Virus record (IMG/VR): IMGVR_UViG_3300009370_001221
Location: 124,001 to 188,000 of that record
Direction: 5' to 3' (one strand)
Length of the DNA: 64,000 bases
Both the position numbers and the translations under genes were made by a program. Shown piece by piece: positions 1,948-39,122 of the stretch. Every line of letters starts with the position of its first letter. The stretch's first letter is position 1. Under the pieces are notes generated by a model that saw only the letters and a program-made list of their open reading frames with translations, was not told the origin of the DNA and did no database searches.

Positions 1948-2972
1948 TAAATGCTCCTATATATGTCTAGTAGCATTTGTGGATCATAATGTTCACTCTC
2001 AATATTAGAAAGTTGGTCTATAACTATAGAGTCAATACTGTCAAAATTTAACTCTATGTCTTCATTCAATATATCTAAATCTAATTTCTCCTTGTCTGGC
2101 AATAAACTTAACTCACGCATTTTAAATTGTTCAGCAAATGTCTCTTTAACATAGTTTGCCTCTTCGTAAGTAATATCAATATCCATAGTAACCCTAGCAT
2201 AGGTTTTCTCAGTTAGATAATAACCCGGATCATCCAGTAATTGCGATAATTTTAATGTTTTATATGAAGGTGCATCAGGCCACGCAACAAACTCTGGCTC
2301 GCCATCCCACTCCAACATCATCATACCTCGCTCATCATCCCAAGCATCACTGTAGTTGTGGGGGAAACAATTGCCTACATATACAACATTCTTGCGTTGC
2401 TGTCTTTTATGAAAGTGGCCGCTAAAAACATAATCTGCTTTATGCATATCTTCAGCATGTAACTCATTAGTTTCAGGCATTTGTATCATTGCGTTCATAT
2501 AGAAATGTGGCAACTCGAAATGTCCAAAGATATATTTTGCTTTTACTTTCTTTAATTTTTTGTAATCATCACCCACGAGCCAAGGCACAATAGCACAATT
2601 TCCCGCATTAAACGGTTCATCTACTATTGTTATACCAGAGAATCTACTAGCAAACTCTACACTATTAAGATCACGCCTATCTCTGTAATATAAGTCGTGA
2701 TTGCCCGTGATAAAGTAAAAATTATCAAACGAACTGCCTAGTTTTTCCAAACTACGCAGGCTATAGTTCAGTGTGCTGACATTGATGCTGGCTCTATGAT
2801 GGTGCCAGTCTCCCAAAAATATGGCAGTTTCGCAATTGTTTTCTTGTGCGGTTGCTATGAACCAATCTACAAAATCTTCGCAATCTTTATTGTGTGTTAT
2901 TGAGTTACTTTTATTACCAAAGTGAATGTCTGTACATACTGCTATTTTATTGAATAAATTATCCGTACTCAT
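1947..2972 (-). CDS. Recombination endonuclease nuclease subunit (T4 gp47 / SbcD / Mre11-like)
   Basis: Metallophosphoesterase motifs DIH, GDWHH, GNHD, GHF, SGHFH. Coupled to the gp46-like gene. Confidence 0.93.
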   Translation of the reverse strand: MSTDNLFNKIAVCTDIHFGNKSNSITHNKDCEDFVDWFIATAQENNCETAIFLGDWHHHRASINVSTLNYSLRSLEKLGSSFDNFYFITGNHDLYYRDRRDLNSVEFASRFSGITIVDEPFNAGNCAIVPWLVGDDYKKLKKVKAKYIFGHFELPHFYMNAMIQMPETNELHAEDMHKADYVFSGHFHKRQQRKNVVYVGNCFPHNYSDAWDDERGMMMLEWDGEPEFVAWPDAPSYKTLKLSQLLDDPGYYLTEKTYARVTMDIDITYEEANYVKETFAEQFKMRELSLLPDKEKLDLDILNEDIELNFDSIDSIVIDQLSNIESEHYDPQMLLDIYRSI

Positions 2973-2979
2973 TTATATT

Positions 2980-3008
2980 ATTATAACGTACTTAAAGTAA
3001 AGTGTCAA
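2980..3008 (-). promoter_or_regulatory. Consensus sigma70 promoter for gp47-gp46, probably leaderless transcript
   Basis: TTGACA (3008-3003), 17 nt, TATAAT (2985-2980). ATG begins after 7 nt and there is no SD. The -35 box overlaps the upstream gene's TGA stop. Confidence 0.85.
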
Positions 3009-3826
3009 GAAGACGATGGTGCTGTATTTGATGTATTTTGATTCTGTCTTGTATAACTTGGTGCAATATTATTCATCTCTAGAATATCATCACGAATATT
3101 TTGATTTTTCTTTTCTGTGTTTAATATTTTAGTAAAGGAATTAGTAATTATTGCTGTATAATAAGCAAATGGATTTTGACTTTTGCTTTCATCAAACAAC
3201 AATCCTACTTGAACTAGTTGTAATATTGCTTGGCCACGCATCTCATCATTATATGTATATCCACGCCAATTAGATCTTGTTCCGTATCTATCACACAATT
3301 TAATAAACATTCGTGCTAACGTATCAGTCATATGCCCATGTTCCTTACAGAATTCTCCCTTTTTTAAATCACCTTTCCAATGACTTTTACCAACGCATAT
3401 TAATACACTTTCTTTACTATCATCATTAAACCGAAAGTGTTGATAAGGCGGAAAAGGTAACTTTTCATAATGATCTGCGACAGATTTAGGAGTTTTTACT
3501 CTGCCGTGTTGTAGTGGTATGTGCTCAAATGACATTATTCTAAACACTAGATCAGATTTTGCTATCTTTTTCCAATTTACTTGAAAGTCAATTAATCTAG
3601 GTTTTTTCTTTTTATTTGTATTTTCTGCTACTGCAATAGCATGATTATTTTTTGCTATTTTCGCGGCTCTATTGCGTTTTGCTTGGGCAACAGAACGTAT
3701 GTTTATTTTTTCAATGTTAGGAAGGATTATATCATAATCCTGATCTGTTGGTGTTAAATAACTACTATAACTATTTTTTGATTTATGTATTTCTTCTAAT
3801 ATATCTTTGTTTCGTAAGTATATCAT
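3005..3826 (-). CDS. Late-transcription sigma factor (T4 gp55-like)
   Basis: N-terminal YLRNKDILEEI and C-terminal NWRGYTYNDEM...FDESKSQNPFAYYTAIITNSF...EKKNQ match the gp55 family pattern. Confidence 0.75.
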   Translation of the reverse strand: MIYLRNKDILEEIHKSKNSYSSYLTPTDQDYDIILPNIEKINIRSVAQAKRNRAAKIAKNNHAIAVAENTNKKKKPRLIDFQVNWKKIAKSDLVFRIMSFEHIPLQHGRVKTPKSVADHYEKLPFPPYQHFRFNDDSKESVLICVGKSHWKGDLKKGEFCKEHGHMTDTLARMFIKLCDRYGTRSNWRGYTYNDEMRGQAILQLVQVGLLFDESKSQNPFAYYTAIITNSFTKILNTEKKNQNIRDDILEMNNIAPSYTRQNQNTSNTAPSSS

Positions 3827-3844
3827 TAAGGTTTCGCTCCATCA

Positions 3845-3852
3845 TATTTATA
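3845..3852 (-). promoter_or_regulatory. T4-type late promoter motif TATAAATA upstream of the gp55-like gene
   Basis: Plus strand TATTTATA at 3845-3852 is TATAAATA on minus, 18 nt before the ATG, with GGAG RBS in between. Confidence 0.55.
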
Positions 3853-3856
3853 CTAT

Positions 3857-3885
3857 ATTATAATACACGTACATTAAAAAGTCAA
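3857..3885 (-). promoter_or_regulatory. sigma70 promoter for the gp55-like gene
   Basis: TTGACT (3885-3880), 17 nt, TATAAT (3862-3857). Confidence 0.8.
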
Positions 3886-3886
3886 A

Positions 3887-3892
3887 TAAATA
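3887..3892 (+). promoter_or_regulatory. Late promoter core TAAATA upstream of baseplate operon
   Basis: TAAATA recurs in 5 plus-strand intergenic gaps upstream of structural genes (3887, 9703, 28075, 28766, 30377). Confidence 0.55.
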
Positions 3893-3915
3893 ATGTTATA
3901 ATATAGGAAAAAAAT

Positions 3916-4656
3916 ATGGCTATACGTGGACTATCACCAAGACTAGGAAACTTACTTGCTAAAGCAATACCTTTTGGTGCTGGGTTATTTGGTAGCTCAG
4001 GTAGTGGGAATCCAACTATTAGATGGAATGGCCCAGCAAAAGAACACAATCATGACTGGCGAACAAAACTTACATTAAGTTCAGCTACCAAAAATTTATT
4101 AGTCGGTAGTACAGTACTGCGTCCATTACACGACACCGGCGGTATTATTTTTCCTTATACACCAACTATTTTTGTACAGCATTCAGCAAATTTTGGTTCT
4201 AGTCAATTAACACATAGCAATTATGACCACCCTGCATTTGATAGTCATACAATTGGTGATTTAACTATTACTGGTCAGTTTACTGCTAATAGTTCTGCAG
4301 AAGCAGACTATGTATTAGCAGTATTACATTTTTTAAGAACAACAACTAAAATGTTTTTCGGCCAGGATTCAGACTTTCCGCCAGGAACACCTCCTCCTGT
4401 TTTGAGATTAAATGGGTTTGGAGATCATATATTTAAAAATATACCAGTAGTAGTAATAAACTTTAACATGGAAATGCCGGGAACTGTTGACTATGTCAGA
4501 ACAACAAATACTTTGTCAATGATTCCAACATCTACTACTATAGCAATTACAGTTAAACCTGTATACTCTAGAGCATCTACTTCAAAACGATTTGGACTTA
4601 AAAAGTTTGCGAGTGGTGCGTTACTAGGTAGTGGTAGTGAAGGGGGATTTATTTAA
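3916..4656 (+). CDS. Baseplate tail-tube initiator/cap-like protein (gp48/gp54-like)
   Basis: Conserved GIIFPYTPTI...THSNY...HFLRTTTKMFFG...PPPVLRL pattern. First gene of the baseplate cluster. Confidence 0.55.
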   Translation: MAIRGLSPRLGNLLAKAIPFGAGLFGSSGSGNPTIRWNGPAKEHNHDWRTKLTLSSATKNLLVGSTVLRPLHDTGGIIFPYTPTIFVQHSANFGSSQLTHSNYDHPAFDSHTIGDLTITGQFTANSSAEADYVLAVLHFLRTTTKMFFGQDSDFPPGTPPPVLRLNGFGDHIFKNIPVVVINFNMEMPGTVDYVRTTNTLSMIPTSTTIAITVKPVYSRASTSKRFGLKKFASGALLGSGSEGGFI

Positions 4657-4958
4657 TGACAGTTACTTACTCAGCTGATAGTCCGTATGCCATTACTCCT
4701 ATAGCCAATAATAAATTAGATTTGATGACTTATAGAACATTTTCTTTTGAGCCAGATGATATGGTGTATACAATTGATCAACTTTACAACAATAGACCAG
4801 ATTTATTAGCGCATGATTTATATGGGAGATCCACTTTTTGGTGGGTTTTTACTGTACGTAATCCAGATATTATAGTAGATCCTATTTGGGATTTTACTAC
4901 TGGTACCACAATATATCTTCCACAATTATCTACGTTAACACGATCATTAGATGGATAA
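4656..4958 (+). CDS. Baseplate wedge protein gp53-like (LysM-like)
   Basis: YNNRPDLLAHDLYG...WWVF..RNP motif and synteny. Confidence 0.7.
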   Translation: MTVTYSADSPYAITPIANNKLDLMTYRTFSFEPDDMVYTIDQLYNNRPDLLAHDLYGRSTFWWVFTVRNPDIIVDPIWDFTTGTTIYLPQLSTLTRSLDG

Positions 4959-4964
4959 TATAGC

Positions 4965-8165: not shown

Positions 8166-8166
8166 A

Positions 8167-9672: not shown

Positions 9673-9702
9673 TTATATATAGTAGCATATTATTAAATTA
9701 AC

Positions 9703-9708
9703 TAAATA
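9703..9708 (+). promoter_or_regulatory. Late promoter core TAAATA, 6 nt before ATG (leaderless)
   Basis: CTAAATA-TTGTAC-ATG with no SD. Confidence 0.6.
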
Positions 9709-9714
9709 TTGTAC

Positions 9715-10107
9715 ATGGCTATTACGTATAAAGGGTTTTCGACCTACAAAAAACAATTTTCCAACTCATACACTTTGAGTGGATTTGAACTTGCAAAACA
9801 AGATTTAACAAATCATTTTAACATTCGCAAGGGTGAAAAACTAATGAATCCAGAATTTGGGTCCATAGTTTGGGATGCATTATACGAGCCACTAACAGAC
9901 GAAATAGTATCTGAAATAGAAGAAGATATTAAAAGTATTATTGGGTATGATCCAAGATTGGAAGCAGAAAGCATATTGCTTGAACAGTATGAAAATGGAT
10001 TGCTTTTAGAATTACAAGTAAAATATATACCTGATCAAATATTAGGATCACTTTTGTTTGATTTTAATAACACATCTGGCCAAGTAACAGTGAGAGAAAC
10101 AGCATAA
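9715..10107 (+). CDS. Baseplate wedge subunit gp25-like
   Basis: YKGFST...LAKQDLTNHFNIRKGEKLMNPEFGSIVWDALYEP...YDPR motif. ATG 9715 preferred over TTG 9709. Confidence 0.85.
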   Translation: MAITYKGFSTYKKQFSNSYTLSGFELAKQDLTNHFNIRKGEKLMNPEFGSIVWDALYEPLTDEIVSEIEEDIKSIIGYDPRLEAESILLEQYENGLLLELQVKYIPDQILGSLLFDFNNTSGQVTVRETA

Positions 10108-13508: not shown

Positions 13509-13516
13509 GAAACACC

Positions 13517-22500: not shown

Positions 22501-25500
22501 ATCAGCAATAGTGTTTAAAAAATACACACAAAATACTGGTTCTGTATTAGAAGCAACTAATACAAATAATAAAGTTGCATGGAATAGTAAACGCACTCAA
22601 TCCGATAAAATTGATATTGGTGCTATTAATAAAGTCATTACGTATGATAAATCAACTAATAAATTTATCGATTATATTGACTATCATGATCCAATTAAAG
22701 GCAAAATACCAGGCGTTGCTGATGAAGAAATTAGTTTTAAAACAATTTATGATCCAGCAGTATACAATGTTACTTTTAATGCAACAGTAGTTAATGACTT
22801 AAAAAATCATTGGGGTCCTAATGAAGTTGGGGTACTATGGTGGGATTTAACTAATACAAAATATATTGAGTATGAACAAGGTGAACTAGAGTATAAACGT
22901 CTTAACTGGGGCAAATTGTTCCCTGGTACACAAATTAATATATATGAGTGGATAGAGAGTGACTCATTACCCTCAACATATGTATCATTAGGAGGTGACG
23001 GCACTCCAAAATTTGCTGATGATTCAGCATATGTAGAGTATCAAAAGTATAATACATCTACAAATACGTTGGAGCCAATTTATTACTATTGGGTTAAAAA
23101 CAAAACATCTGTGCCAGAAGTTTCCAACGCATATTTGGACGCTAATGGACAAATTAAATTTGCGGCGCATGGTAAGGAACTTGAGTTAAAGAGTTTTATA
23201 CCAGCCGCTACGAGAAAATTGCCAGCAAAAACTGTCGCAACAATACTAACAAATCCTACTGCATATGGATTAAAATACATTGGTATTGCCGCACAGAATG
23301 CATTTATTGGATATAATCTACAAACAGGACTAACTGGTGAGAATATTATTTTAAGTATTGAATATGATACTGTTAAAAATGATATACCGTTACATACAGA
23401 ATGGCAACTAGTACAAAAGAATAATCCACTATCAAAACCAAACAATTATTTAATTACTAAACTAGGTGATAGTTTAGCAGGAAAAGATGTAAGTGAAAAT
23501 CTTGTACCAGATACAAACGTACATGTTGGATCACGGTATGGTATAATGGAATACCCACGTCAAAGTATGTTTATTGATAGATTGGGTGCTATTAAAGTAT
23601 TAGTAAACTTCTGTAATTCTGTATTTACTAAACACAGAATGGCATTAGATTATAGTTTAATAAAAATTTCATCAGCAGATAAAGCACCAACATATGGATA
23701 TGGTGAAACTGTAGCAACATATACTGAACTAACTTATATTAATACAAATACAATTACAGATGGTTATAAAGTAATTGTTGCAAGTGATGAAACAAGAGGC
23801 AATTATTGGGTAACATATCAATGGAGTGTTAGTGATAATAGATGGAATTTAGAGAAAAAACAAAAATATGATACAACAAAATATTGGGATTATATTGACT
23901 GGTATGCTACTGGTTATGACTCTAATACTATTATTGATTATACGGTCGCAACAGAAAATGACCGCGCAAAATTAGACACTAAACTTAACGATGTTGTTAA
24001 AGTATTAAATGATGGACAAAGCAAATGGATATTATATAAAAATACTAGTGCCTCAACTACTGATGTATACGATATAATTGGTCAAGAAAATGCTACAATT
24101 AAATTTAAAACAACATTATATACAACAACTACGCCGTTGGCAGAGTTGCGTTATATTATTGATGCATTAAACACACAATTATTTGTCAGTGACTTAGAAG
24201 TTGAATTTAATAAATTATGGTTTGAATTAATACATTTTATCTTGTATGATCAAAACTTACAAGTAGACTGGGCATTTAAAACTAGTTTTGTAACAATCAA
24301 TCAAACTGTACGTAAACTATCTGAATTAGTAAATTATAGTTATGATGTGCAAGATAGTGTTAGAGATTTTATTAATGAAGCAAAACCATACAGAACAAAT
24401 ATTAGAGAATATGTATACCGTTATGATTACACTGAATTACCACAAATAGGAAATACTGATTTTGATTTGCCAGGCTACTATGATACAACAGACAAATTAT
24501 TTAGATCACCTAATGTATATGAAGCAGACGACGATGCTCGTATGCTTACAGCACCTTGGGTTGATTGGAAAAATCATTATACAAAGAAAGTAGTTAGTGT
24601 TAATGTTTTAACTGCCGGCAGTGGTTATGCAACTACTGCAACATCAACATATGATGCAGTTGGTTATGATATTACTGGATATGATCACAGTGCAACTACA
24701 GCATCTCCACCAATAGTTACTATTTCAAGTGGCGCACAATGGAAATTAGGTTATACTTATGATGAAACCAAAATACCTGGCGCCGCAGGCGCACAGGCAG
24801 TTCTTGTAGTACCAGAACACAGTCCAGATACATTATGGTACTATAGTGGTACAGAACAAGGCACAACTCAATGGAAAGATATGGGTTGGAAAGTTACAAT
24901 AAAACCTAAATTAGCAACTAATGAAAGTAAAACGTTTGCTGTAACTGTAGTATTGGATGGCACAGGCAAACCAGATTTTTATATAGATGGCACAGAACGA
25001 CCTAACCTTATTTTGTACAGGGGGTCAACATACACATTCACACAAACAGACGTAAGCAATCTAGGTTACGGGTTCTTTAGGTTCTCGGCAATAGAAGATG
25101 GCACACATAGAGATGGCTCTGGCGCAACTGCTGTTCCTGTAATGAAAACACCTGGTTTAGCAAGTGTTGATTCTATTACAGTAACCAACGGTGGTACAGG
25201 TTATGTAACCACTCCAATAGTAACTATATCAGGCGGTAGTGGTAGTGGTGCAACTGGTTATGCTAATTTAGAAAACTATAAAGTAAGAGACCTTAAAGAA
25301 ACAATTAAATTTGATCGTGTTGATGCACCATCACATGTTAAAACAATTGCCGTAACTGCTGGAGGCAGTGGATATACCTCAGCACCTACGGTAACAATAA
25401 CAAATGCCTCAGGAGATACAACAGGCGTTGGTGCAAGTGCCAAAGCGGTTATTACCGGTGGAGCAGTAACAGCGGTTATTGTAGAACAAGAAGGCACAGG

Positions 25501-28069
25501 TTATACTGCCGCACCAACAATTAGTTTTACTGGTGGCGGTGGCAGTAGTGCTACAGCAACAGCAACAGTTTCATACTCATCCTATAATAAGTTAGAAACA
25601 GCACATGAGGCGGCCGCTAAAAAGCACAGCGATCGTTTAACATTATATTATGCTGGTGGACAAGCAGGCACAGGTAGTACAAAAACATGGGATAATAAGA
25701 CAGCTGACATTTTAACCTATGATGCAGTTATAGCAGACTCAGGATTACAATATAAAGCAAACAAAGTAACAGGTGCTACATTTGATATGGAACCTGGTTA
25801 TGATAGAGCATCATTCTCATCTTCGGCATTTGATGATTCTGAAATTAGTCCAGAAGGTATAGCAGTTATCTCAAGTGTAGATACTGATTTAGGCGGTGGT
25901 GACTTTAGTACAACTGGTGGTATAGATCCTGCTGATGTTGTAGTAGATGGTGACGGCTTTGTAACAGAATATACATCACATGCACCAGAAGAACAAGTAC
26001 CCGGTCGTGTATTTGATACATTGGATATTAAAGTATATGAAATGCCTTCACCACGTGAATCAGGCGTTACTATTAAAAAACATACATTTGAAGGTAATGG
26101 TTCAACTGTAACATATGATTTTACTGGCAAGGGCGGACTGCCTACAAATCTTGAAGGTATTGAAGTATATGTAAATAATTCATTAAAGAAACTAACAACC
26201 GATTATACTGTTTCTATTAGAAGTAATGATATAACAATGGTTTCTCCTGTGCCAACAGGACAATTAATACATTTTGTATTAATTGAAACAGGTGGTGATA
26301 CTGTTACATCAACTAAACAAGATTTTTATGGGGACGGTTCAACAACACAATATGTTGTGAATGTTCCATATGAATATGCACAATATTTGTATGTGACTGT
26401 AAACGGTGTAGAAAATAATCCAACATGGACAGCAACCAGTTATTATAAAAAAACAAAATTAACTTTTGCGTCAGCACCTCCAAGTGGCGGCCGCATACGA
26501 GTACATACATTCAATAAGTCAGGATTAACACTTACAAATGCAGGCAGTGGCTACACATCGGCTCCAGCAGTAACATTTAGTGGAGGTGGAGGTAGTGCGG
26601 CAGCTGCTACAGCAGTTATCAATGCTGAAGGCAAAGTAAGTGGATTAATTGTAACAAATGCAGGTACTGGATATACATCAGCACCAACTGTTACAATTGC
26701 AGGCACAGCAACCGCAACTGCTACTGTAACTGATGGTAAAATAGAAGCAATTAGACCATTTGTTAAGGTTGAAAGTGAAGAACAAACAATTACTGTTCCC
26801 GGCAGTCCAACATGGCCTGCAAGTTACACTTATACATATGGTCAGGATAACTTCTTTGATTTTGGTCCTGACGCCGCAAAAGTGTTTGTGTATTTAAATA
26901 ATGAACGATTGAATCCACCAGATACAGAATACTATACTGGTGATGGGTCAACTGCTGTATATGCCTGTCCGTCTAATCCAACTATTGCATATGCTTCAGT
27001 AACTGATGCAATGGTTCAGGTACACGTAGATGGTGTATTAAAAACACTTACAACAGATTATACATTTACTGGTGGAACACCACCACGTGATGAAATAACA
27101 TTTGCTGTTGGTAAAGTACCAGCGGCAGGTGCAGAAATAGCAATTACAGTTAGAAACGGGCAGTATTGGATTCCAAATGATTATCAAATTATACTTGAAA
27201 ATGGTAGCGGTGTATCTGTTACTGCTGGAACAATTGCTACAGGTGATAAATTGTTTATACAGTCATTTGCTAATCAGAGATATAGCAAAGGCAAAACAAT
27301 TGTAATAAAAGGCACATCAGTTGCAACGGCTACTTCACTAGAAAAATATGATGCAGTAATTTATGATTCGTCTGGTTATGCTGGTGATGTAAGTGTATCA
27401 ATCTCAACACCAATATATGATATATCCGCATTAGAAAATAATTCAAATTATGTATGGGTATGGTTAAATGGTGTACCACAAATTGCTAACCACGATTACT
27501 ATATAACTGGAACTAAACTAGTAATGACTCCATTAAGTGGTAGCATATTAGCGTCAGATATGATTACTGTTAGTGGTATGAGACAAGCAGAACAACGACC
27601 TGGTATTGCTTTTAGAATTTGGAAAGATATGTTTGACAAGACATCTTACTATAGAATTGCATCAGCAAATACAACAACACTGTCTACAGCATTAGCAATG
27701 ACAGATATAGAAATTAATGTAACAGACGCAACTAAATTGTTGACACCTGTTCCAACAACAGCAACGCCAGGTGTGATATTCATTAATGGCGAGCGTATAG
27801 AATATTGGGAAATAGATGGTAATAAACTAAAAAGAATACGTCGTGGCACATGGGGCACAGGTGCTCATGCTACACATGCTTCAGCAAGTGAAGTAGTAGA
27901 TGGCAGTAAACAACAATTAATTCCAGGATCAACAGTACATACTAAAGTTTGGTATGATCAAGGAACAACACCAGCCGCGGCTACAAACGGCTTAGGTTTG
28001 GGTATGGCAACTGGTAAGGAAGTAACGTTCCTTAAAGAGGCACCGCTATCAACTCCCAAGGTAATATAA
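13517..28069 (+). CDS. Giant mosaic baseplate wedge/tail structural protein (gp7-like scaffold; YHYH domain, FG-GAP-like propeller, GDGST and GxGY-x4-P repeats)
   Basis: One uninterrupted 4850-aa ORF after gp6. N-terminal TVNLLPQQFQTDVNKKFLNATLDQL. Internal domains recognised by motif (see findings). Confidence 0.7.
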   Translation: MAIRKTVNLLPQQFQTDVNKKFLNATLDQLISPGTMEMLSGFVGRRDVDNFKNTDSYIVETDNDRLNYQLEPAVTIKKELSETKYDFASTYIDIVNSISAAGGDNNNHDKLFSNEYTVWSPPIDYDKTINYTKYYWLQTGPDRCDITDPITISDIVGKKTYTYTSVDGNKTLKFSTGLKVRFTGTVTPSTYANIDYIVADVGTSIRLIPLSELYTPESAVYTLSKDYLTIKRGAIDGNQWSNNNRWFHEEIIGVTATYNKDTAIYDSALRAKRPILEFDNDLKLYDYGTKLLTTVDLVDTTFTDAFTQLEGEPGGYIDGVALTAGQKVVFTADTDPLVNGYIYDVQFVTIGGVSVIHLEKNTTVADPATDNTIIVNSGADNKGTQWYYKNSKWYKGQVKTGLNQAPIFDVFDKNGNSFSTYASSTFAGSNIFSYAVNSAGTADTELGFALTYKNFTNIGDIIFNDNLIKDSFSYTSDATAGTTTSVRLATGFLHKNTALTTYSTLSNWEKAPFESRQFIQNTIVVGSELKQFKVTTIPKTETTAKNLIVTVNGKLKEKGTGTTTKDYYVTTDTGFQYVNFTNNLTIGDILVIKVHTDTSIEKLTTGEFYTIPTNLSNNPLNDMTTTTNFTLGQVRDHISSCIENSLDFSGATLGSNNIRDIGDIATLGTKIIQNTGSLLKAGYMLTNGTYNLIDSITHASNEYNRFKNQFLNKAKTIGDFTSTSDRLDKTLRAMAAEKNSTMPYFDSDMVAFSTDITTLSYTVFDIDNKQFELNTTYNDTIPGQTAVLVYKNDVMLLKDQDYTFSTTTPFVTLTSNITLAENDVIKLVEYTNTGGNFIPPTPTKLGLYPKYVPSKYSDDTYTTTIDVIQGHDGSITPAYSDYRDDLLLELERRIYNNIKAVYNFKLVDINSVIPSRFRKTQYSTDTVNNILAIELAQWANNNNVDYTKNSYYVSGSDWTYNYKNIKDTLSDAEFLPGYWRAIYKYFYDTDRPHTHPWEMLGFSIKPSWWETTYGPAPYTKDNLVLWTDIEAGKIVSGDRAGTYIEYARPGLVATFIPTDAAGDLKSPTSIGIVGLVTGEIQGNFSVGHQGPVETAWRRSSYYPFAIQILLALTKPAKYCEFMFDTSKITTNMLGHYVDKTTTLPIKPNVSKIHSYINTDSTVDYTLGYNNWVVDYSKYLGLNTTTFYKQLNALGINLAYKMSGFADKDKLKIILEQISPSKSTTDIFIPQEDYNFHLMESSPIQSINYSGVIITRSTGGWKIDGYNKKQPTFKILPSIITSNRRRTVSVGGYAPKCSELITGRSYSVNEYIKSGDIYYQVKTAFIAGDGDDLANLTRIAKLPTIGGVSATQYDDYSTTVATIPYGKEYTTVQEVYDFLISYGRYLESVGFVFDNVTNGFDYIEDWKNTAKEFLFWTLHNFSIGSMITCSAGANTIKLNLVSAQIDTMSNNMLPSSVIDQNRDRISVNNLFYSRIDNNFQLSVSDNTDGIYAATFNPIQTEHLLILENETVFKDVIWSLFTGSRQNRIKLVGYKTELWDGTQQLPGYVLLDDTVDDWDINKSYPIGEIVKFKDKFYASKFNHDPNDLTELGKFDFSKWKLLDRVNGGLLTNLDSKADNFRGYYEIEDDGRIIETDTLASNLIGFQNRKYLENLQIGDIAQKKFYQGFIKEKGTSSITNKLLRAKLPAIDSTLNLYEEWAFRVGEYGSVASSQVIEFKLKENEFTDNPELIEIINTAEQYKNTNITHRPSDLYQKPLEPRQFNKNVFKNLAEDISTRDYLPDAGYARLDDVQHKVLSLENWVPNNTVDITENINIDTQLIGKTSYTSTEGIITTLTNGMVVKFTGINTIPTSYKTGTWIVTGVDESIKLTEKSEYLNSLNVGDKMWVANSATYPPTYAENSNDWNVYRITSTKNNPISITGDTIANTIKVTFKNPVDSILVNEIIILRRFVDSTIPAIDWSGVYKVKTNFTSDGLNVLELYADLDLSASFETLSLNETSTRGEFLKLESARYATTSALVNRTEPTHGWEDGDYAWIDNHNSTNKWAVLEKKDPYTLGKELYPNGKATNTGFGQGVAGNKDLSTILVGSVYDTTSAGSIEQWTRDVATVFDVKSIFVSDITSKTAGTLNTSGYLLTVESDGLPHPAPFGTFPTTDGKNPNRVVTRNYKHTFKTRVGTNTTAAPQVAVPLGGIGIMANGVVIASPSATATLPNDNGPAKGVAPTGFEWNAVENATAVGMDASHGHPQEDNQYHYHSGKFLSQWDYHVYQANTYYQGTNYSGDHWRHTDGHSKILGYAYDGYPIYGPFGYQTATDSTTTPLRMTSAYQKHTDPVSGRGYTYTEYPAGTFINDYQFNSAVGTLDKHNGRYCVTPDYPDGTYAYFLTITSAGVPVYPYIIGPTFKEIPTLETDTVPVDPGGSNAQTIALTPGEFTYSNTVVDGSKLKNSGWAGWQFDMAVDDDYVVTSAPNSNSGQGYAIVLKKKTDKTYEPFDIMRSPSPTTNGYFGYDIAVSKSGTYVLVGAPGELKAYMYKLGTGVTASNEYFNGDGSTNVFTFSSTSFSNSNELTVIVDGQIKIETLDYTLSATQITFVAASIPPSGTNNIHVRKGNYYSAIKTFTGASGTDFGRSVALSDDGTIAFIGQPNKADGTALSAGATEVWSKTPTDTYFKIQDIKSNISSTNENFGKEVECGVDGHIVAIGSPGTDFLVIKEITTDAINAGQVECWIDNTKHTGTITGTVANPTVSIGDKLVINDQEVTFTGTALSNVVSDITAKAIPHITASATSDNKLKIVSTKTDANAKLTIRAGTTNGGTVFTALGLTLYTYKSALRHPDGPQNAFYGEHIKFNNTATMITIGSPSSSSEFELTLDGNLTKFDQQNTIITDVQPDSGSALIYDINTDLTYSLIQRVDWANRKKNDKFGTGLAMIGNTALIGAPGDDYFVEELKTADGVATAYAITGQFTTDNLEISMNGRTMLQAEFSSDNASPNSTVTFTTAPVATSAIVFKKYTQNTGSVLEATNTNNKVAWNSKRTQSDKIDIGAINKVITYDKSTNKFIDYIDYHDPIKGKIPGVADEEISFKTIYDPAVYNVTFNATVVNDLKNHWGPNEVGVLWWDLTNTKYIEYEQGELEYKRLNWGKLFPGTQINIYEWIESDSLPSTYVSLGGDGTPKFADDSAYVEYQKYNTSTNTLEPIYYYWVKNKTSVPEVSNAYLDANGQIKFAAHGKELELKSFIPAATRKLPAKTVATILTNPTAYGLKYIGIAAQNAFIGYNLQTGLTGENIILSIEYDTVKNDIPLHTEWQLVQKNNPLSKPNNYLITKLGDSLAGKDVSENLVPDTNVHVGSRYGIMEYPRQSMFIDRLGAIKVLVNFCNSVFTKHRMALDYSLIKISSADKAPTYGYGETVATYTELTYINTNTITDGYKVIVASDETRGNYWVTYQWSVSDNRWNLEKKQKYDTTKYWDYIDWYATGYDSNTIIDYTVATENDRAKLDTKLNDVVKVLNDGQSKWILYKNTSASTTDVYDIIGQENATIKFKTTLYTTTTPLAELRYIIDALNTQLFVSDLEVEFNKLWFELIHFILYDQNLQVDWAFKTSFVTINQTVRKLSELVNYSYDVQDSVRDFINEAKPYRTNIREYVYRYDYTELPQIGNTDFDLPGYYDTTDKLFRSPNVYEADDDARMLTAPWVDWKNHYTKKVVSVNVLTAGSGYATTATSTYDAVGYDITGYDHSATTASPPIVTISSGAQWKLGYTYDETKIPGAAGAQAVLVVPEHSPDTLWYYSGTEQGTTQWKDMGWKVTIKPKLATNESKTFAVTVVLDGTGKPDFYIDGTERPNLILYRGSTYTFTQTDVSNLGYGFFRFSAIEDGTHRDGSGATAVPVMKTPGLASVDSITVTNGGTGYVTTPIVTISGGSGSGATGYANLENYKVRDLKETIKFDRVDAPSHVKTIAVTAGGSGYTSAPTVTITNASGDTTGVGASAKAVITGGAVTAVIVEQEGTGYTAAPTISFTGGGGSSATATATVSYSSYNKLETAHEAAAKKHSDRLTLYYAGGQAGTGSTKTWDNKTADILTYDAVIADSGLQYKANKVTGATFDMEPGYDRASFSSSAFDDSEISPEGIAVISSVDTDLGGGDFSTTGGIDPADVVVDGDGFVTEYTSHAPEEQVPGRVFDTLDIKVYEMPSPRESGVTIKKHTFEGNGSTVTYDFTGKGGLPTNLEGIEVYVNNSLKKLTTDYTVSIRSNDITMVSPVPTGQLIHFVLIETGGDTVTSTKQDFYGDGSTTQYVVNVPYEYAQYLYVTVNGVENNPTWTATSYYKKTKLTFASAPPSGGRIRVHTFNKSGLTLTNAGSGYTSAPAVTFSGGGGSAAAATAVINAEGKVSGLIVTNAGTGYTSAPTVTIAGTATATATVTDGKIEAIRPFVKVESEEQTITVPGSPTWPASYTYTYGQDNFFDFGPDAAKVFVYLNNERLNPPDTEYYTGDGSTAVYACPSNPTIAYASVTDAMVQVHVDGVLKTLTTDYTFTGGTPPRDEITFAVGKVPAAGAEIAITVRNGQYWIPNDYQIILENGSGVSVTAGTIATGDKLFIQSFANQRYSKGKTIVIKGTSVATATSLEKYDAVIYDSSGYAGDVSVSISTPIYDISALENNSNYVWVWLNGVPQIANHDYYITGTKLVMTPLSGSILASDMITVSGMRQAEQRPGIAFRIWKDMFDKTSYYRIASANTTTLSTALAMTDIEINVTDATKLLTPVPTTATPGVIFINGERIEYWEIDGNKLKRIRRGTWGTGAHATHASASEVVDGSKQQLIPGSTVHTKVWYDQGTTPAAATNGLGLGMATGKEVTFLKEAPLSTPKVI

Positions 28070-28074
28070 TAGGA

Positions 28075-28080
28075 TAAATA
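28075..28080 (+). promoter_or_regulatory. Late promoter core TAAATA, 6 nt before ATG (leaderless)
   Basis: ATAAATA-CTTCAG-ATG at 28087. Confidence 0.6.
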
Positions 28081-28086
28081 CTTCAG

Positions 28087-28761
28087 ATGGAAAACAATGA
28101 AATCAAGCAAGAAACCAGTGAAGAGCAAGAAGAAATGCAAGAGAAACAACCTAACGAAATTCCAGGCGTAAACGTCGAGGGTTTTATTAAAATATTTGAT
28201 CCAGATTCGGAAGAAGTATTTGTAGAACAACGTAACGCTATTCATTATGAAAACTTTTCCAAAGCATTAGCAGACAGTATTTCTAATCAGACTACTGGCT
28301 TTATACACGAAATGCACTTCGGTAATGGTGGCACATCCGTGTCTACTACAGGCATTATAACATATCTACCTGCTAACAATTCAGGTGCGTCTTCGGATTT
28401 GTATAATAAAACTTATTACAAAGTTGTTGATGGAACTAGTTCCTCAAATACAGATCCTACAAGAAATAAAATGACTATAAGCCACACAAGTGGTACAATT
28501 TATACTGATATTTTAGTAACTTGTTTGCTTGATTATGGAGAGCCTGCAGGGCAAGAGGCATTTGATAACTCATCAGCACTAGATGGGTCATATGTTTTTG
28601 ATGAATTAGGGTTAAAAAGTTGGGAATCAGGTGGTATTGCTACAGGTAATTTATTAACACATGTAGTATTTCACCCAGTACAAAAATCACTTAATCGGTT
28701 AATTCAAATAGATTATACGATAAGGATACAAACATTAACGAATCTAAGTAGTGCAACATAA
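28087..28761 (+). CDS. Conserved virion structural protein (tail/baseplate-fibre attachment type)
   Basis: FGNGGT, CLLDYGEP, FDELGL, LLTHVVFHPVQKSLNR motifs typical of T4-like tail-region proteins, plus synteny. Confidence 0.55.
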   Translation: MENNEIKQETSEEQEEMQEKQPNEIPGVNVEGFIKIFDPDSEEVFVEQRNAIHYENFSKALADSISNQTTGFIHEMHFGNGGTSVSTTGIITYLPANNSGASSDLYNKTYYKVVDGTSSSNTDPTRNKMTISHTSGTIYTDILVTCLLDYGEPAGQEAFDNSSALDGSYVFDELGLKSWESGGIATGNLLTHVVFHPVQKSLNRLIQIDYTIRIQTLTNLSSAT

Positions 28762-28765
28762 TAGA

Positions 28766-28771
28766 TAAATA
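28766..28771 (+). promoter_or_regulatory. Late promoter core TAAATA (leadered, AGGAGA RBS at 28801)
   Basis: ATAAATA followed by a small hairpin and AGGAGA 8 nt before the GTG start. Confidence 0.55.
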
Positions 28772-28814
28772 GAAATATACGTATTTTAAAAAGTCGACTC
28801 AGGAGAGATAAAAA

Positions 28815-30359
28815 GTGGCATATACAGTTAACAAAACGAGTGGTGCAGTTTTATCCGTAATTGCGGATGGAACATTAGACACTACAACGAATTTAACCTT
28901 AATTGGTAAAAACTATTCCGGTTATGGTGAAGTTCAAAATGAAAACTTCGTAAAACTACTAGAAAACTTTGCTAACTCCTCCCAACCGTCCTCACCACTC
29001 GCTGGCCAGCTCTGGTGGGACACAACAAATACCGCACTCAAAGTATATACCGGAACAGCTTGGGTAGAATCAGGTGGTGTTACATCCGCATCTTCAGCAC
29101 CTTCGAGCCCAGTAGAAGGTGATTTATGGTTTGATACTACAAATGATCAATTAAAAGCATGGAATGGTTCAGCGTGGATTGTTATTGGACCAAGTTATTC
29201 GGGTGGTGTATTAAGTGGAGCAATAGTAGATACAATAGTAGATAATGCATCAGGAACACACACAGTAGTAAAAATGTATGTTGCTAATACATTAGTAGGA
29301 ATTGTTTCTAAAGATAGTGTTTTTACACCAAACGTTGCTATATCAGGATTTGCAACAGTAAGTCCAGGATATAATTTAAGTACAAATGTAACAGGCGCAA
29401 AATATACAGGCACAGCAACAGACTCCGATAAGTTGGGTGGTGTTGCGGCCGCAAATTATTTGCGTTCAAATGCTAACGATACAACAAGTGGAACACTTGG
29501 CGTTGTCAATGATAATGGTATGACCATTGGTGTCGACTCTGATTTATCAATGAGTGTATCTGGTAATGATGTAACAATTAAGAACGTTACAAGCAACGGT
29601 AATTTACTATTTGGTATTAACCAAGGTGGTTCACCAGCAACTGCTATTACTATTAGTGGTTCAACAAACTCAGTAACTATCGCAGGTGACTTAACAGTTA
29701 GTGGCACAACTACTACACTTAATACAAACAACTTACTTGTAGAAGATCCATTAATTGTTCTTGCTAAGAATGTAACCGGCGCACCATCATTTGATTCTGG
29801 TTTAATAGTAGAGCGTGGCACTCAGCCTAACACAGGTTGGATTTGGGATGAATCTCAAGACCAATGGGCCGCAGTTAATACAACTGAAACAGGTTCAACA
29901 GCAGGCAATGTAGCAATTGATTCATACGCAAACATACAATGTGCTACAATGACGGGTATTTCAACACAAGCGAAATATGCTGACTTGGCGGAAAACTTTA
30001 CAGCAGATTATGCATATGATCCAGGAACAGTATTGCAAATTGGTGGTGAGCATGAAGTTACTATGTGTGAAACTGATGCTTCAGAAGATGTGCTAGGTGT
30101 TGTTAGTTCATATCCAGCATACTTAATGAACAGTGAAGAAGACGGCGTCACAGTAGCAATTGCAGGTCGTGTACCAGTTAAAGTATCAGGCCCAGTTACT
30201 AAGGGTGATAGATTAGTTTCAGCAGGTAATGGCACAGCAAGAAAAGCTTCTAAAGAAGAATGCACTCCATGGAATGTTATTGGGCGGGCCTTAGAAAGCG
30301 ATATTGATAAAGAGGAAACACATATTACATTAGTTATGTGCATTGTTAAAGTAGTTTAA
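28815..30359 (+). CDS. Tail fibre-like protein with C-terminal intramolecular chaperone-like domain
   Basis: GKNYSGYGEVQNENFVKLLENFA, two PxxGxLWxD motifs, C-terminal YADLAE...PGTV...GVVSSYPAYLMN...GRVPVKV..PV.KGDRLV. Confidence 0.7.
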   Translation: MAYTVNKTSGAVLSVIADGTLDTTTNLTLIGKNYSGYGEVQNENFVKLLENFANSSQPSSPLAGQLWWDTTNTALKVYTGTAWVESGGVTSASSAPSSPVEGDLWFDTTNDQLKAWNGSAWIVIGPSYSGGVLSGAIVDTIVDNASGTHTVVKMYVANTLVGIVSKDSVFTPNVAISGFATVSPGYNLSTNVTGAKYTGTATDSDKLGGVAAANYLRSNANDTTSGTLGVVNDNGMTIGVDSDLSMSVSGNDVTIKNVTSNGNLLFGINQGGSPATAITISGSTNSVTIAGDLTVSGTTTTLNTNNLLVEDPLIVLAKNVTGAPSFDSGLIVERGTQPNTGWIWDESQDQWAAVNTTETGSTAGNVAIDSYANIQCATMTGISTQAKYADLAENFTADYAYDPGTVLQIGGEHEVTMCETDASEDVLGVVSSYPAYLMNSEEDGVTVAIAGRVPVKVSGPVTKGDRLVSAGNGTARKASKEECTPWNVIGRALESDIDKEETHITLVMCIVKVV

Positions 30360-30376
30360 AAACTATTTGCTTTTGC

Positions 30377-30382
30377 TAAATA
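30377..30382 (+). promoter_or_regulatory. Late promoter core TAAATA (leadered, AGGAGA RBS)
   Basis: CTAAATA, then hairpin ATAACG-ATATA-CGTTAT, then AGGAGA 8 nt before ATG 30452. Confidence 0.55.
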
Positions 30383-30451
30383 TAGATACATAACGATATA
30401 CGTTATTCTCGAGAAAGAAAAAACGATAATTTATCCTAGGAGAAATCGAAT

Positions 30452-31366
30452 ATGGCATATACATCAGGTGATACGATTCTAGCAGCTCACTATAACAGTT
30501 TCGTATCTGATTTTAATACTAACTGGGGGACAGGAAGTGGTGATCAAGGCTACGGCCAATCAAATACACTTTCCTCGGTCTCAGCTGGTGATACTGTAAC
30601 TGCCACCCAATGGTCTACACTTTTAGCAAGAGAGACAAGCGCCGCGGCACACCAAGGCACTACTCTAACGTCGATTACCTCACCAAACGCAGGCGATACA
30701 ATTAGTGCATTTACAGCATTAGCTGCAAATACAGCATTGATTAACACAAATAGACACAATATTGACAGTGGAAAATATGCTGATACCACAAGCACAGAGA
30801 GTGGTTCAGGAAGTTGGACAACAAGTACAGTACATACTTTTACATTAACTTTTGCCAGTGCTGATGCGGCAAGATATTATTACAATTGTGGCGGTTCAAC
30901 CCGCTTTAGTTTTAGTAGATCAGGCGGTACTTCACATACAAAGAATACAGAATGGTCGAATTTGGCAACAGCGTGTGGTACAGTTATTTTTGCTGTACAA
31001 GGCACAACCAAGTCAGGTGGTTCTGGATCAACAACAACCTTGGCAACAACTATTGGTTATCAAGATATGACAACATCAAACCAAACATTGTTTAAACAGA
31101 TGGAAGGTGATAACCCTTATACTGCTAACTTTATTCAGATAGAAGCAAAAACTAATGCTGTTGATAGTGGCGGCAATGGTGATAATGGACACATACTAAC
31201 ATTTGTAGTTACATGGTCTGATGCGGCTGGTGATACATTTAATGATACTGTAGATGGTACAGTAACAGATACTATTACACATAGAACACCAAACACAAGT
31301 TCATTAAATAATGCAAGTTGGAGTGCGGCACCTTCATATAGTAATACAAGTTTTAGTCAGTCATAA
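30452..31366 (+). CDS. Virion structural (fibre-associated) protein, Ser/Thr/Gly-rich
   Basis: MAYTSGDTILAAHYN N-terminus, repeated AGDT(V/I)(T/S)A motif, last gene of the tail cluster. Confidence 0.55.
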   Translation: MAYTSGDTILAAHYNSFVSDFNTNWGTGSGDQGYGQSNTLSSVSAGDTVTATQWSTLLARETSAAAHQGTTLTSITSPNAGDTISAFTALAANTALINTNRHNIDSGKYADTTSTESGSGSWTTSTVHTFTLTFASADAARYYYNCGGSTRFSFSRSGGTSHTKNTEWSNLATACGTVIFAVQGTTKSGGSGSTTTLATTIGYQDMTTSNQTLFKQMEGDNPYTANFIQIEAKTNAVDSGGNGDNGHILTFVVTWSDAAGDTFNDTVDGTVTDTITHRTPNTSSLNNASWSAAPSYSNTSFSQS

Positions 31367-31369
31367 TAG

Positions 31370-31398
31370 TTGACAATTTGTTGTATCTAATGTATAAT
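31370..31398 (+). promoter_or_regulatory. Perfect consensus sigma70 promoter heading the modification cluster, probably leaderless
   Basis: TTGACA (31370-75), 17 nt, TATAAT (31393-98). ATG at 31406 after 7 nt, no SD. Confidence 0.88.
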
Positions 31399-31405
31399 AT
31401 TTTAT

Positions 31406-31756
31406 ATGAGTGTGAAAGATACAGTAAAAAAGAAATTTAACCAAAAAGTGGCTCACGCAACAAAGCGTGAGACCACTTTAGGTTTACTATCCCTCCCTTA
31501 TAACAGCGGTTTATTTAAAATAACAAGAGAATTAATTAATTTTGCCGAATTAATGTCGCTACGTTCCGCGATAGCAGAGTCGGCAGACTTAAAAGCAAAT
31601 CCCACAGTAGTATTAGATTCATATGATAATCCTATATTAATAGAAAATCCACGAGACTTTACTGAGAAACTGTGGCAACGATACTATGAAGTCAATAACG
31701 AATATCTCGAAGATATCAAAACTATTAGGGCAACAAGAAAACCCGAACAAATCTAA
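31406..31756 (+). CDS. Hypothetical protein
   Basis: 116-aa ORF directly behind the promoter and coupled to the next gene (TAATG). Confidence 0.7.
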   Translation: MSVKDTVKKKFNQKVAHATKRETTLGLLSLPYNSGLFKITRELINFAELMSLRSAIAESADLKANPTVVLDSYDNPILIENPRDFTEKLWQRYYEVNNEYLEDIKTIRATRKPEQI

Positions 31757-39005: not shown

Positions 39006-39022
39006 TACGCTAAAGTGGGCGG

Positions 39023-39067: not shown

Positions 39068-39122
39068 TACACAGTAGATACCATATCGGAACATAACAAT
39101 GCAGGGCGGAGGATTTGAATAT

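What the first reader, a model, noticed from the sequence alone, without database searches (positions are those of the whole stretch)
2972..31406. Leaderless mRNAs from both early and late promoters
Seen: two perfect TTGACA-N17-TATAAT promoters each have ATG exactly 7 nt after the -10 box with no SD (gp47 at 2972 minus; 31406 plus). Two TAAATA late motifs each have ATG exactly 6 nt downstream (9715, 28087). Other TAAATA promoters (28766, 30377) have leaders with AGGAGA. Known: sigma70 starts about 7 nt after -10, T4 late promoters start a few nt after TATAAATA, and leaderless mRNAs initiate on 70S ribosomes. Inference: the phage uses leaderless initiation for the first genes of several operons.
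Basis: partly seen in the sequence, partly recalled or inferred. Interest (0 to 1): 0.6.

Follow-up and report, generated by a model that had tools for sequence, protein, structure and literature searches.

The report
Promoters fused directly to start codons
An uncultured marine giant phage places both host-type and T4-type late promoters so close to about 38 start codons that the messenger RNAs should begin at the AUG itself, with no ribosome-binding leader. Its uncultured relatives share the late-promoter version of this layout; T4 and two cultured cousins do not.

Summary
All four sites are in the sequence exactly as described.

- **Genome:** the window lies in a 235,363-bp phage contig from seawater. 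It is a T4-core jumbo phage, distantly related to PA5oct and RaK2.
- **Late motif:** the exact hexamer TAAATA sits 5 nt before the first ATG of a long ORF 19-21 times and 6 nt before it 4 times. Any other distance has about 1. By T4 numbering, a 5-nt gap puts the A of ATG at +1.
- **Sigma70-type promoters:** these sit 6 nt (8 cases) or 7 nt (3 cases) before a first ATG, against a background of about 1 per distance.
- **The 38 candidate genes:** 37 have no Shine-Dalgarno sequence, 35 have no alternative SD-supported start, and all begin with ATG.
- **Gene classes:** the sigma70 class holds replication genes (DNA polymerase, primase, SbcD). The TAAATA class holds virion and packaging genes (gp25, PAAR, large terminase).
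- **Conservation:** TAAATA-N5-ATG upstream of gp25 is kept down to 45% protein identity. The pattern is 3-6-fold enriched in five related uncultured contigs, but not in PA5oct, RaK2 or T4, whose late genes have SD leaders.
- **Missing evidence:** no transcript 5' ends could be mapped, so leaderless expression remains a strong inference, not a demonstration.

I rate it a new variant of a known kind.

The parts
2970..3008 (-). Sigma70-type promoter fused to the start codon: -35 TTGACA 3008-3003, 17-nt spacer, -10 TATAAT 2985-2980, 7 nt, ATG 2972-2970. No SD. The -35 overlaps the stop codon of the gp55-like gene.
   Evidence: The geometry is kept in relatives at 94-100% protein identity.
1947..2972 (-). 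SbcD/gp47-like recombination nuclease gene (341 aa), predicted first gene of a leaderless transcript. It is followed by the SbcC/gp46-like gene at 190-1947.
   Evidence: Pfam Metallophos and PHROG 100, E=3e-62. There is no in-frame start between ATG 2972 and the DIH metallophosphoesterase motif.
3005..3826 (-). gp55-like late sigma factor (273 aa), the presumed reader of the TAAATA promoters. Its own upstream region (3827-3885) carries TTGACT-N17-TATAAT, a perfect TATAAATA and a GGAG SD.
   Evidence: PHROG 12791, E=8e-76, and PHROG 234. Best cultured relative is PA5oct at 46% identity. Upstream sequence read.
9703..9717 (+). Late-type promoter core TAAATA (9703-9708), 6 nt, then ATG 9715 of the gp25-like baseplate gene (9715-10107). 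No SD.
   Evidence: TAAATA-N4-7-ATG (mostly N5) is conserved in homologues down to 45% identity.
28075..28089 (+). TAAATA (28075-28080), 6 nt, then ATG 28087 of a 224-aa late protein (28087-28761). It lies 17 nt after the stop of the 4,850-aa ORF. There is a weak AGGA 12 nt upstream.
   Evidence: Homologues have TAAATA at N4-N6 in many relatives and an AGGA SD instead in others.
31370..31408 (+). Perfect TTGACA (31370-31375), N17, TATAAT (31393-31398), N7, ATG 31406 of a 116-aa ORF (31406-31756). This ORF heads a co-directional array that runs into a radical-SAM gene cluster.
   Evidence: The N17 and N6/7 geometry is kept down to 72% identity while the spacer sequence changes.
28766..28817 (+). 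Leadered comparator: TAAATA 28766-28771, about 43-nt leader, SD AGGAGA 28801-28806, GTG start 28815.
   Evidence: It shows that the same hexamer works at a distance with an SD, and there tolerates a non-ATG start.
30377..30454 (+). Leadered comparator: TAAATA 30377-30382, leader with a 6-bp hairpin, SD AGGAGA 30438-30443, ATG 30452.

Best explanation
The phage builds many transcription units in which the promoter's -10 element sits at the exact distance from an ATG that makes the A of the ATG the first transcribed base.

Two classes do this:
1. Promoters of the host sigma70 type (TTGACA-N17-TATAAT, then 6-7 nt) in front of replication and nucleotide-metabolism genes: DNA polymerase, primase, exonuclease, dNMP kinase and SbcD/gp47.
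2. T4-type late promoters reduced to the exact hexamer TAAATA (then 5 nt, less often 4 or 6) in front of virion and packaging genes: gp25, a PAAR spike tip, large terminase and a wedge-like protein. These are presumably read by the phage's gp55-like sigma.

The resulting mRNAs would start with 5'-AUG, or carry one extra base. They have no Shine-Dalgarno sequence, so they would be translated by the leaderless route, in which the ribosome binds the 5'-terminal AUG.

Roughly as many late promoters keep a 15-65-nt leader with an AGGAG-type SD. The major capsid gene has an SD, although no TAAATA lies within 80 nt upstream of it. Leaderless and SD-led expression therefore coexist. The leaderless form may mark lower-copy proteins and ties their translation to their own promoter.

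Shown here: the motifs, the spacing peaks, the absence of SD, the conservation and the functional split. Inferred: the start-site position, which sigma reads which promoter, and the translation mode.
For: 1. Spacing peaks. Exact TAAATA to first ATG of an ORF of at least 50 aa gives 19 at d=5, 4 at d=6 and a mean of 0.92 elsewhere (P about 7e-19). Sigma70-type promoters give 8 at d=6, 3 at d=7 and a mean of 0.95 elsewhere (P about 5e-6).

2. Sequence-specific recognition.
- One-mismatch variants of TAAATA show no peak.
- The hexamer is about 2-fold depleted overall: 62 against 142.9 +/- 12.6 in window shuffles, and 272 against 514 genome-wide.
- The same hexamer also appears about 17-27 nt upstream of SD-led starts. 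It therefore behaves as a promoter, independent of the ATG.
- There is no conservation at -35, as in T4.

3. Geometry. The T4 review places the first T of TATAAATA at -13, so N5 gives A = +1. The base before the ATG is T or C in 19 of 21 N5 sites, a typical -1/+1 pyrimidine-purine step.

4. No SD and no way round it. 37 of 38 candidates have no SD, and only 3 have any SD-supported start in the next 50 codons. Beside the 21 ATG starts, only one TTG and no GTG opens a long ORF at N5. N-termini are conserved from the ATG in homologues of gp25, gp47, the 31406 ORF and the 28087 ORF.

5. Functional split. It matches a T4-like temporal programme, and a gp55 homologue is present.

6. Conservation.
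- gp25 keeps TAAATA-N4-7 (mostly N5) down to 45% protein identity while the flanks diverge.
- The 31406 family keeps N17 and N6/7 with a changed spacer.
- TAAATA-N5-ATG counts against a reversed-pattern control are 24 vs 6 here. In five related contigs they are 46 vs 7, 25 vs 4, 32 vs 6, 9 vs 3 and 9 vs 3. An N9 spacing is not enriched.

7. Precedent for the inference. A promoter box localised at about -10 from gene starts is the criterion GeneMarkS-2 uses to call leaderless transcription.
Against: - No transcription start site was measured. The only RNA-library data are short assembled contigs at 28.6-31.1 kb that miss the sites and cannot show 5' ends.
- The host is unknown, so its capacity for leaderless translation is unknown.
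- 32 of the 38 genes lie just behind a same-strand gene (median gap 24-31 nt). Read-through transcripts carrying these ATGs internally must also exist.
- In 80%-identity relatives the gp47 promoter is kept, but the ATG lies 11-15 nt after the -10, without an SD. A strictly 5'-terminal AUG is therefore not essential for that gene.
- The first 40 nt of the candidates are not significantly less structured than those of SD-led genes (P=0.07).
- Gene calls outside the window are my own crude ones.
Confidence: 0.72

Rival explanations
1. The genes are translated mainly from longer polycistronic transcripts by SD-independent internal initiation. This could be termination-reinitiation across the short gaps, or S1-mediated binding to AU-rich sequence. 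The promoters next to the ATGs would then add little.
For: 32 of 38 candidates follow a same-strand gene after 4-129 nt. An RNA-library contig crosses the 28761/28815 junction. The 80%-identity relatives of gp47 have 11-15 nt between the -10 and the ATG, without an SD.
Against: Generic AU-richness or coupling does not predict any of the following:
- an exact hexamer with no tolerance for one mismatch;
- a one-nucleotide-sharp spacing peak that equals the T4 +1 position;
- a second peak at the sigma70 +1 position.

The TAA of TAAATA can be the upstream stop codon at only 2 of 27 sites. Six candidates follow an opposite-strand gene, so no coupling is possible there.
Confidence: 0.15
2. TAAATA-N5-AUG is an RNA-level signal, for example the site of a phage or host endoribonuclease that trims longer transcripts to a 5'-AUG. 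It would not be a promoter.
For: Processing that creates leaderless mRNAs has been proposed in E. coli for MazF cutting at ACA (own knowledge). The motif lies on the sense strand, and its fixed distance would fit a cleavage ruler.
Against: The hexamer is the core of the T4-family late promoter, and a gp55 homologue is encoded. The same hexamer precedes SD-led late genes at 17-65 nt, where trimming to an AUG makes no sense. The sigma70 class shows the same fusion with an unrelated motif.
Confidence: 0.05
3. The pattern is an artefact: chance in AT-rich DNA, or wrongly chosen start codons whose real SD-led starts lie downstream.
For: The genome is 64% A+T. Gene calls outside the window are home-made. 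Three late candidates have an SD-supported start within 50 codons.
Against: - Control hexamers of the same composition show no peak.
- Reversed-pattern and N9 controls are flat.
- Poisson P is about 1e-18 for the late class and about 5e-6 for the sigma70 class.
- Homologue alignments fix the ATG in all four reader sites.
- PA5oct, RaK2 and T4 scanned for the same TAAATA-to-ATG spacing show no excess.
Confidence: 0.03

Closest known systems
Phage lambda cI mRNA from the PRM promoter (classical leaderless phage mRNA)
   Same: A sigma70 promoter is placed so that transcription starts at the A of the AUG. There is no SD, and translation begins at a 5'-terminal AUG (own knowledge).
   Different: Lambda has a single regulatory gene of this kind. 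Here at least 11 sigma70-type and at least 27 late-type units are built this way, including DNA polymerase and virion genes, and the layout is shared across a clade.
T4 late promoters (gp55 sigma, TATAAATA at -13 to -6)
   Same: A gp55 homologue is present. The promoter is a -10-only A/T motif with no -35 element, it lies upstream of virion genes, and the region downstream of the box is AT-rich.
   Different: The core is the 6-mer TAAATA, and the first two positions are not conserved. The sigma is 273 aa, against about 185 aa in T4 (own knowledge). In T4 the listed TAAATA-to-ATG distances were mostly 13-30 nt with GGAG-type SDs and no obvious N5 excess (listing incomplete). Here about half of the late promoters abut the ATG.
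Late promoter ATAAATA of RaK2-like jumbo phages (CBB, GAP32) and PA5oct
   Same: The phage supergroup and gene order are the same: gp46-gp47-gp55, and gp5-gp25-gp6 followed by a giant virion protein. The late motif is the same.
   Different: In PA5oct and RaK2 the motif lies 17-30 nt upstream with an SD. TAAATA-N5-ATG is not enriched: 15 vs 12 and 5 vs 17.
Bacteria with frequent leaderless transcription (GeneMarkS-2 group C, for example Mycobacterium and Deinococcus)
   Same: The genome has dual start architecture: a -10 box localised about 10 nt from some starts and SD sites at the others.
   Different: Here the genome is a phage, and two different sigma specificities are both fused to ATGs. 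The early promoters carry a full -35/-10 consensus.
Poxvirus late promoters (TAAATG initiator overlapping the start codon); recalled from memory, not tested here
   Same: A viral late-promoter core is fused to the ATG of late genes.
   Different: The polymerase and host domain are unrelated. Poxvirus late mRNAs gain a 5' poly(A) head by slippage. The resemblance is only conceptual.

Membership tests
Leaderless mRNA | The primary 5' end coincides with the start codon (0 to a few nt of 5' UTR) | not testable with these tools
   Only assembled RNA-library contigs were available. None covers 28087 or 31406, and contigs cannot show 5' ends.
Leaderless mRNA | No Shine-Dalgarno sequence or other leader upstream of the start | tested here: met
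   37 of 38 candidates have an anti-SD duplex weaker than -4.5 kcal/mol, and most are at or above 0.
Leaderless mRNA | AUG start codon (non-AUG starts are poorly used at a 5' end) | tested here: met
   At N5, long ORFs open with ATG 21 times, TTG once and GTG never. An SD-led late gene uses GTG.
Leaderless mRNA | -10 promoter box localised at a fixed distance of about 6-7 nt from the start codon (GeneMarkS-2 criterion) | tested here: met
   Sigma70 -10: peak at 6-7 nt. TAAATA: peak at 5 nt, which equals the +1 position by T4 numbering.
Leaderless mRNA | Initiation by direct ribosome binding to the 5'-terminal AUG | not testable with these tools
   This needs toeprinting or in vitro translation, and the host is unknown.
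T4-type late transcription system | gp55-family sigma encoded by the phage | tested here: met
   Window 3005-3826 (-): PHROG 12791, E=8e-76, and PHROG 234, E=5e-24.
T4-type late transcription system | TATAAATA-like -10 box without a -35 element upstream of virion genes | tested here: met
   Exact TAAATA lies upstream of gp25, PAAR, TerL and others. There is no information content upstream of the hexamer. Only the last 6 of T4's 8 positions are conserved.
T4-type late transcription system | gp33 co-activator and gp45 sliding-clamp activator | not tested
   Not searched. The CBB paper reports no gp33 or gp45 homologues in that relative.
Host sigma70 (RpoD) promoters | TTGACA and TATAAT hexamers separated by 16-18 nt | tested here: met
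   12 perfect and 31 one-mismatch sites in 235 kb. That they are read by the host holoenzyme is inferred, because the host is unknown.

The most novel reading that the evidence does not exclude
Systematic leaderless expression may be a takeover strategy of this uncultured jumbo-phage clade. By fusing both early and late promoters to AUGs, and by altering the ribosome or initiation factors, the phage would keep its own leaderless messages translated while SD-dependent host translation is damped. The candidate ribosome-altering factor is the phage-encoded bS21 homologue with its 35-residue N-terminal extension. This would be a phage-imposed switch in the mode of translation initiation.
Probability: 0.1. 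Interest if true: 0.85.

Novelty: new variant of a known kind. Interest (0 to 1): 0.6.

Why it matters
Leaderless mRNAs in phages are known mostly as single cases, such as lambda cI. T4-type late transcription is a textbook system whose messages carry SD leaders.

Here about one gene in seven of a giant phage is predicted to be expressed from a message that begins at its AUG. These include the DNA polymerase, the large terminase and baseplate parts. They come from two unrelated promoter classes, and the late-promoter design is shared by a widespread uncultured clade but absent from cultured cousins.

If confirmed, this would:
- show that gp55-type promoters can be used as leaderless expression units;
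- give a simple sequence rule (TAAATA-N5-ATG) that fixes start codons and late genes in thousands of metagenomic jumbo-phage contigs, where standard gene callers will misplace starts;
- say something about the translation apparatus of the unknown marine host;
- offer a natural test bed for why a genome mixes leaderless and SD-led expression. One idea is that it reflects protein copy number, since the major capsid gene is SD-led while gp25, PAAR and the terminase gene are leaderless.

Tried and rejected
- **Near-identical DNA search** of the phage collection: no match. The closest cultured relatives are only 35-46% identical in protein.
- **RNA evidence.** One run search and one read-laying run were allowed. 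The four RNA-library runs gave only 126-786-nt assembled contigs between 28,593 and 31,135, none at 28087 or 31406. They give no information on start sites.
- **Host inference from the phage bS21.** The nearest bacterial homologues are a mix of Saprospiria, Bacteroidia, Margulisiibacteriota and Clostridia at 40-52% identity, so no call is possible. A Bacteroidota host looks unlikely. The Bacteroidetes-type TAnnTTTG box shows no positional enrichment. About a third to a half of the genes have SD sequences. The early promoters are of the E. coli type.
- **bS21 as the cause of leaderless use.** It is present in this phage and in the three most strongly enriched relatives. It is also present in PA5oct, whose late genes in the 40-kb stretch examined are mostly SD-led, and it is absent from RaK2. 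The link is unsupported, so I keep it only as the speculative novel case.
- **5' structure.** The first 40 nt of the candidates are only slightly less structured than those of SD-led genes (-2.9 vs -3.5 kcal/mol, P=0.07).
- **One-mismatch variants of TAAATA:** not enriched at N5, so I did not widen the class.
- **Other translation-factor homologues.** S1 (PF00575) and IF3_C (PF00707) were not found in the genome.
- **Literature.** Searches found no report of leaderless T4-type late messages. The phiKZ and AR9 studies report no leaderless phage transcripts.


Full report
**What the window is.** The window is bases 124,001-188,000 of a 235,363-bp linear phage contig. It has 35.8% G+C and is rated about 67% complete. 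It recurs in seawater and marine metagenomes.

The contig carries T4-core genes:
- SbcC/gp46 and SbcD/gp47;
- a 273-aa gp55-like late sigma;
- gp5, gp25 and gp6;
- a gp23-type capsid protein and a gp20-type portal.

Its gene order is that of the jumbo phages PA5oct and RaK2: gp46-gp47-gp55, then gp5-gp25-gp6 followed by a giant virion protein. Protein identity to them is only 35-46%. No cultured phage is close.

**The observation.** So are the two leadered TAAATA promoters with AGGAGA. Three of the four ATGs have no SD at all. The fourth (28087) has only a weak AGGA 12 nt upstream.

Homologue alignments fix each ATG as the real start:
- The gp25 N-terminus MAITYKGF and the gp47 N-terminus are conserved from residue 1.
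- In the 31406 family the ATG is conserved, whereas the nearby GTG is not.

**Genome-wide test: sigma70-type promoters.** Among 43 sigma70 matches with at most one mismatch, eight have the ATG of a long ORF 6-7 nt after the -10. I then allowed one mismatch in the -10 and two in the -35, and asked only for first ATGs of ORFs of at least 50 aa. The distance histogram reads 8 at 6 nt and 3 at 7 nt, against 0.95 per bin elsewhere (P about 5e-6).

**Genome-wide test: the late motif.** The result is sharper here. TAAATA occurs 272 times on both strands. A long-ORF ATG follows after exactly 5 nt 21 times (19 if restricted to first ATGs) and after 6 nt 4 times. At any other distance from 0 to 20 nt it follows 0-4 times (P about 7e-19). 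Five control hexamers of similar composition show no comparably sharp peak; ATAAAT, which overlaps TAAATA by one base, shows only the same peak shifted by 1 nt.

**Why TAAATA is a promoter and not just A/T-rich context.**
- The hexamer must be exact. One-mismatch variants are not enriched at N5.
- It is strongly avoided elsewhere. The window has 62 copies against 142.9 +/- 12.6 in dinucleotide-preserving shuffles, and the genome has 272 against 514 expected from base composition.
- It also occurs 17-65 nt upstream of SD-led late genes, both here and in relatives.
- Nothing is conserved at -35, as in T4.
- A related motif, ATAAATA, has been proposed as the late promoter of the RaK2-like phages CBB and GAP32.

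**Why the spacing means leaderless.** The T4 late-transcription review numbers the first T of TATAAATA as -13. TAAATA therefore spans -11 to -6, and the sixth base after it is +1. That base is exactly the A of the ATG in the N5 class.

The base before the ATG is a pyrimidine in 19 of 21 N5 sites. For sigma70, 6-7 intervening bases put the A at the 7th or 8th position after the -10, the usual start window (own knowledge).

Of the 38 candidates (27 late with N4-6, 11 sigma70-type):
- 37 lack an SD;
- only 3 have any SD-supported alternative start within 50 codons;
- all start with ATG, and beside the 21 ATG starts only one TTG and no GTG opens a long ORF at N5, whereas an SD-led late gene starts with GTG.

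A -10 box localised about 10 nt from gene starts is the accepted computational signature of leaderless transcription.

**Function split.** The sigma70-fused genes are DNA polymerase, primase, an exonuclease, dNMP kinase, SbcD/gp47, a dehydrogenase, a methyltransferase and small unknowns. The TAAATA-fused genes include gp25, a PAAR protein, the large terminase, a wedge-like structural protein and many unknowns.

This matches a T4-like early/middle versus late programme. The major capsid gene is SD-led (AGGAGA), and the portal gene has TAAATA followed by 21 nt. I read this as a hint, no more, that the leaderless form goes with lower-copy proteins.

**Context.** 32 of the 38 genes follow a same-strand gene after a short gap (median 24-31 nt). 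The promoters overlap the ends of upstream genes, so these are nested units inside gene arrays rather than classical operon heads.

Read-through transcripts must therefore exist, and on them these ATGs would lack any SD. Either such copies are poorly translated, which would tie expression to the gene's own promoter, or an SD-independent internal route also operates. That is the main rival explanation.

- **gp47.** The TTGACA-N17-TATAAT-N7-ATG arrangement is kept in relatives at 94-100% identity. In 80%-identity relatives the promoter stays but the ATG lies 11-15 nt after the -10, without an SD. In 55-59% relatives, a group keeps a promoter at the same place followed by a roughly 20-nt leader with GGAGA. 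The leader has therefore been lost along this lineage.
- **gp25.** TAAATA-N5 (range 4-7) is conserved down to 45% identity while all other upstream sequence diverges. One exception has a leader and an SD.
- **The 31406 family.** It keeps N17 and N6/7 down to 72% identity, with a different spacer sequence.
- **The 28087 family.** It has TAAATA at N4-N6 in many relatives and an AGGA SD in others.

**Relatives: whole-record counts.** Counts of TAAATA-N5-ATG against the reversed-pattern control, with N9 counts where measured:

| Record | N5 | Control | N9 |
|---|---|---|---|
| This contig | 24 | 6 | - |
| 322-kb near-twin | 46 | 7 | 11 |
| More distant contig | 25 | 4 | 4 |
| More distant contig | 32 | 6 | 8 |
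| More distant contig | 9 | 3 | 4 |
| More distant contig | 9 | 3 | 0 |
| PA5oct | 15 | 12 | - |
| RaK2 | 5 | 17 | - |

In the annotated PA5oct and RaK2 regions, most genes have an SD and the late motif lies 17-30 nt upstream. In T4, the listed TAAATA-to-ATG matches were mostly 13-30 nt apart with GGAG-type SDs and showed no obvious N5 excess (60 of the 160 matches were not listed).

**What could not be done.** No 5' ends could be mapped. The RNA-library runs that hold this phage are stored as short contigs that miss the sites. The host is unknown.

**Comparison with what is known, and verdict.** Single leaderless phage genes are classical (lambda cI). T4-type late promoters are also classical. 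I found no report of late promoters of this type fused to start codons, nor of a phage using leaderless units on this scale. The phiKZ and AR9 transcriptome studies report no leaderless phage transcripts.

I therefore rate the finding a real feature that extends well beyond the four sites. It is best explained as clade-wide leaderless expression from two promoter classes: a new variant of known kinds, with moderate to high interest, pending 5'-end mapping.

**Side observation.** The phage encodes a bS21 homologue. A published hypothesis holds that phage bS21 biases ribosomes towards phage messages late in infection. In E. coli, ribosomes lacking uS2 and bS21 favour the leaderless cI message. 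PA5oct also encodes bS21, yet its late genes in the region examined are mostly SD-led. Any link to the leaderless design is therefore speculative.

Noticed in passing
Genome 23021-23341 (-), outside the window; L173:1453-1773 (-): The phage encodes a ribosomal protein bS21 homologue (Pfam 58.9 bits). It is 106 aa long, has a 35-residue N-terminal extension and has its own strong SD, GGAGGA. It is also present in three related contigs and in PA5oct, but not in RaK2. Its nearest bacterial homologues are taxonomically mixed.
   Followed up: partly
window 13517-28069 (+): A single 4,850-aa ORF lies directly after the gp6-like gene. It is syntenic with the giant virion proteins of PA5oct (3,857 aa) and RaK2 (3,326 aa).
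   Followed up: no
window 35312-43664 (+): A run of at least five paralogous radical-SAM domain proteins lies downstream of the leaderless 31370 promoter. A further radical-SAM gene at genome 21348 has TAAATA-N5-ATG.
   Followed up: no
window 3827-3885 (-): The gp55-like sigma gene is preceded by TTGACT-N17-TATAAT, then a perfect T4 8-mer TATAAATA, then a GGAG SD. This suggests both early and late (self-amplifying) transcription of the late sigma.
   Followed up: no
whole window and genome: TAAATA is depleted about 2-fold: 62 against 143 +/- 13 in window shuffles, and 272 against 514 genome-wide. TATAAT is at expectation. This is consistent with selection against stray late promoters.
   Followed up: yes
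window 30390-30406 (+): A 6-bp hairpin (ATAACG / CGTTAT) lies at the predicted 5' end of the leadered late transcript from TAAATA 30377. It may be a 5' stabiliser.
   Followed up: no
genome 22433-22500 (+), outside the window: A perfect TTGACA-N17-TATAAT is followed after 6 nt by an 8-codon mini-ORF that contains GGAGG. Its first bases resemble the leaderless start of the 31406 family in a relative (L210). It may be a decayed leaderless gene reused as an SD leader.
   Followed up: no
IMG/VR relatives L006/G005 and L009-L011: A 322,647-bp contig, rated 90% complete and 97% identical in gp47, appears to be a fuller genome of nearly the same phage. This contig is therefore probably about two thirds of the genome.
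   Followed up: partly
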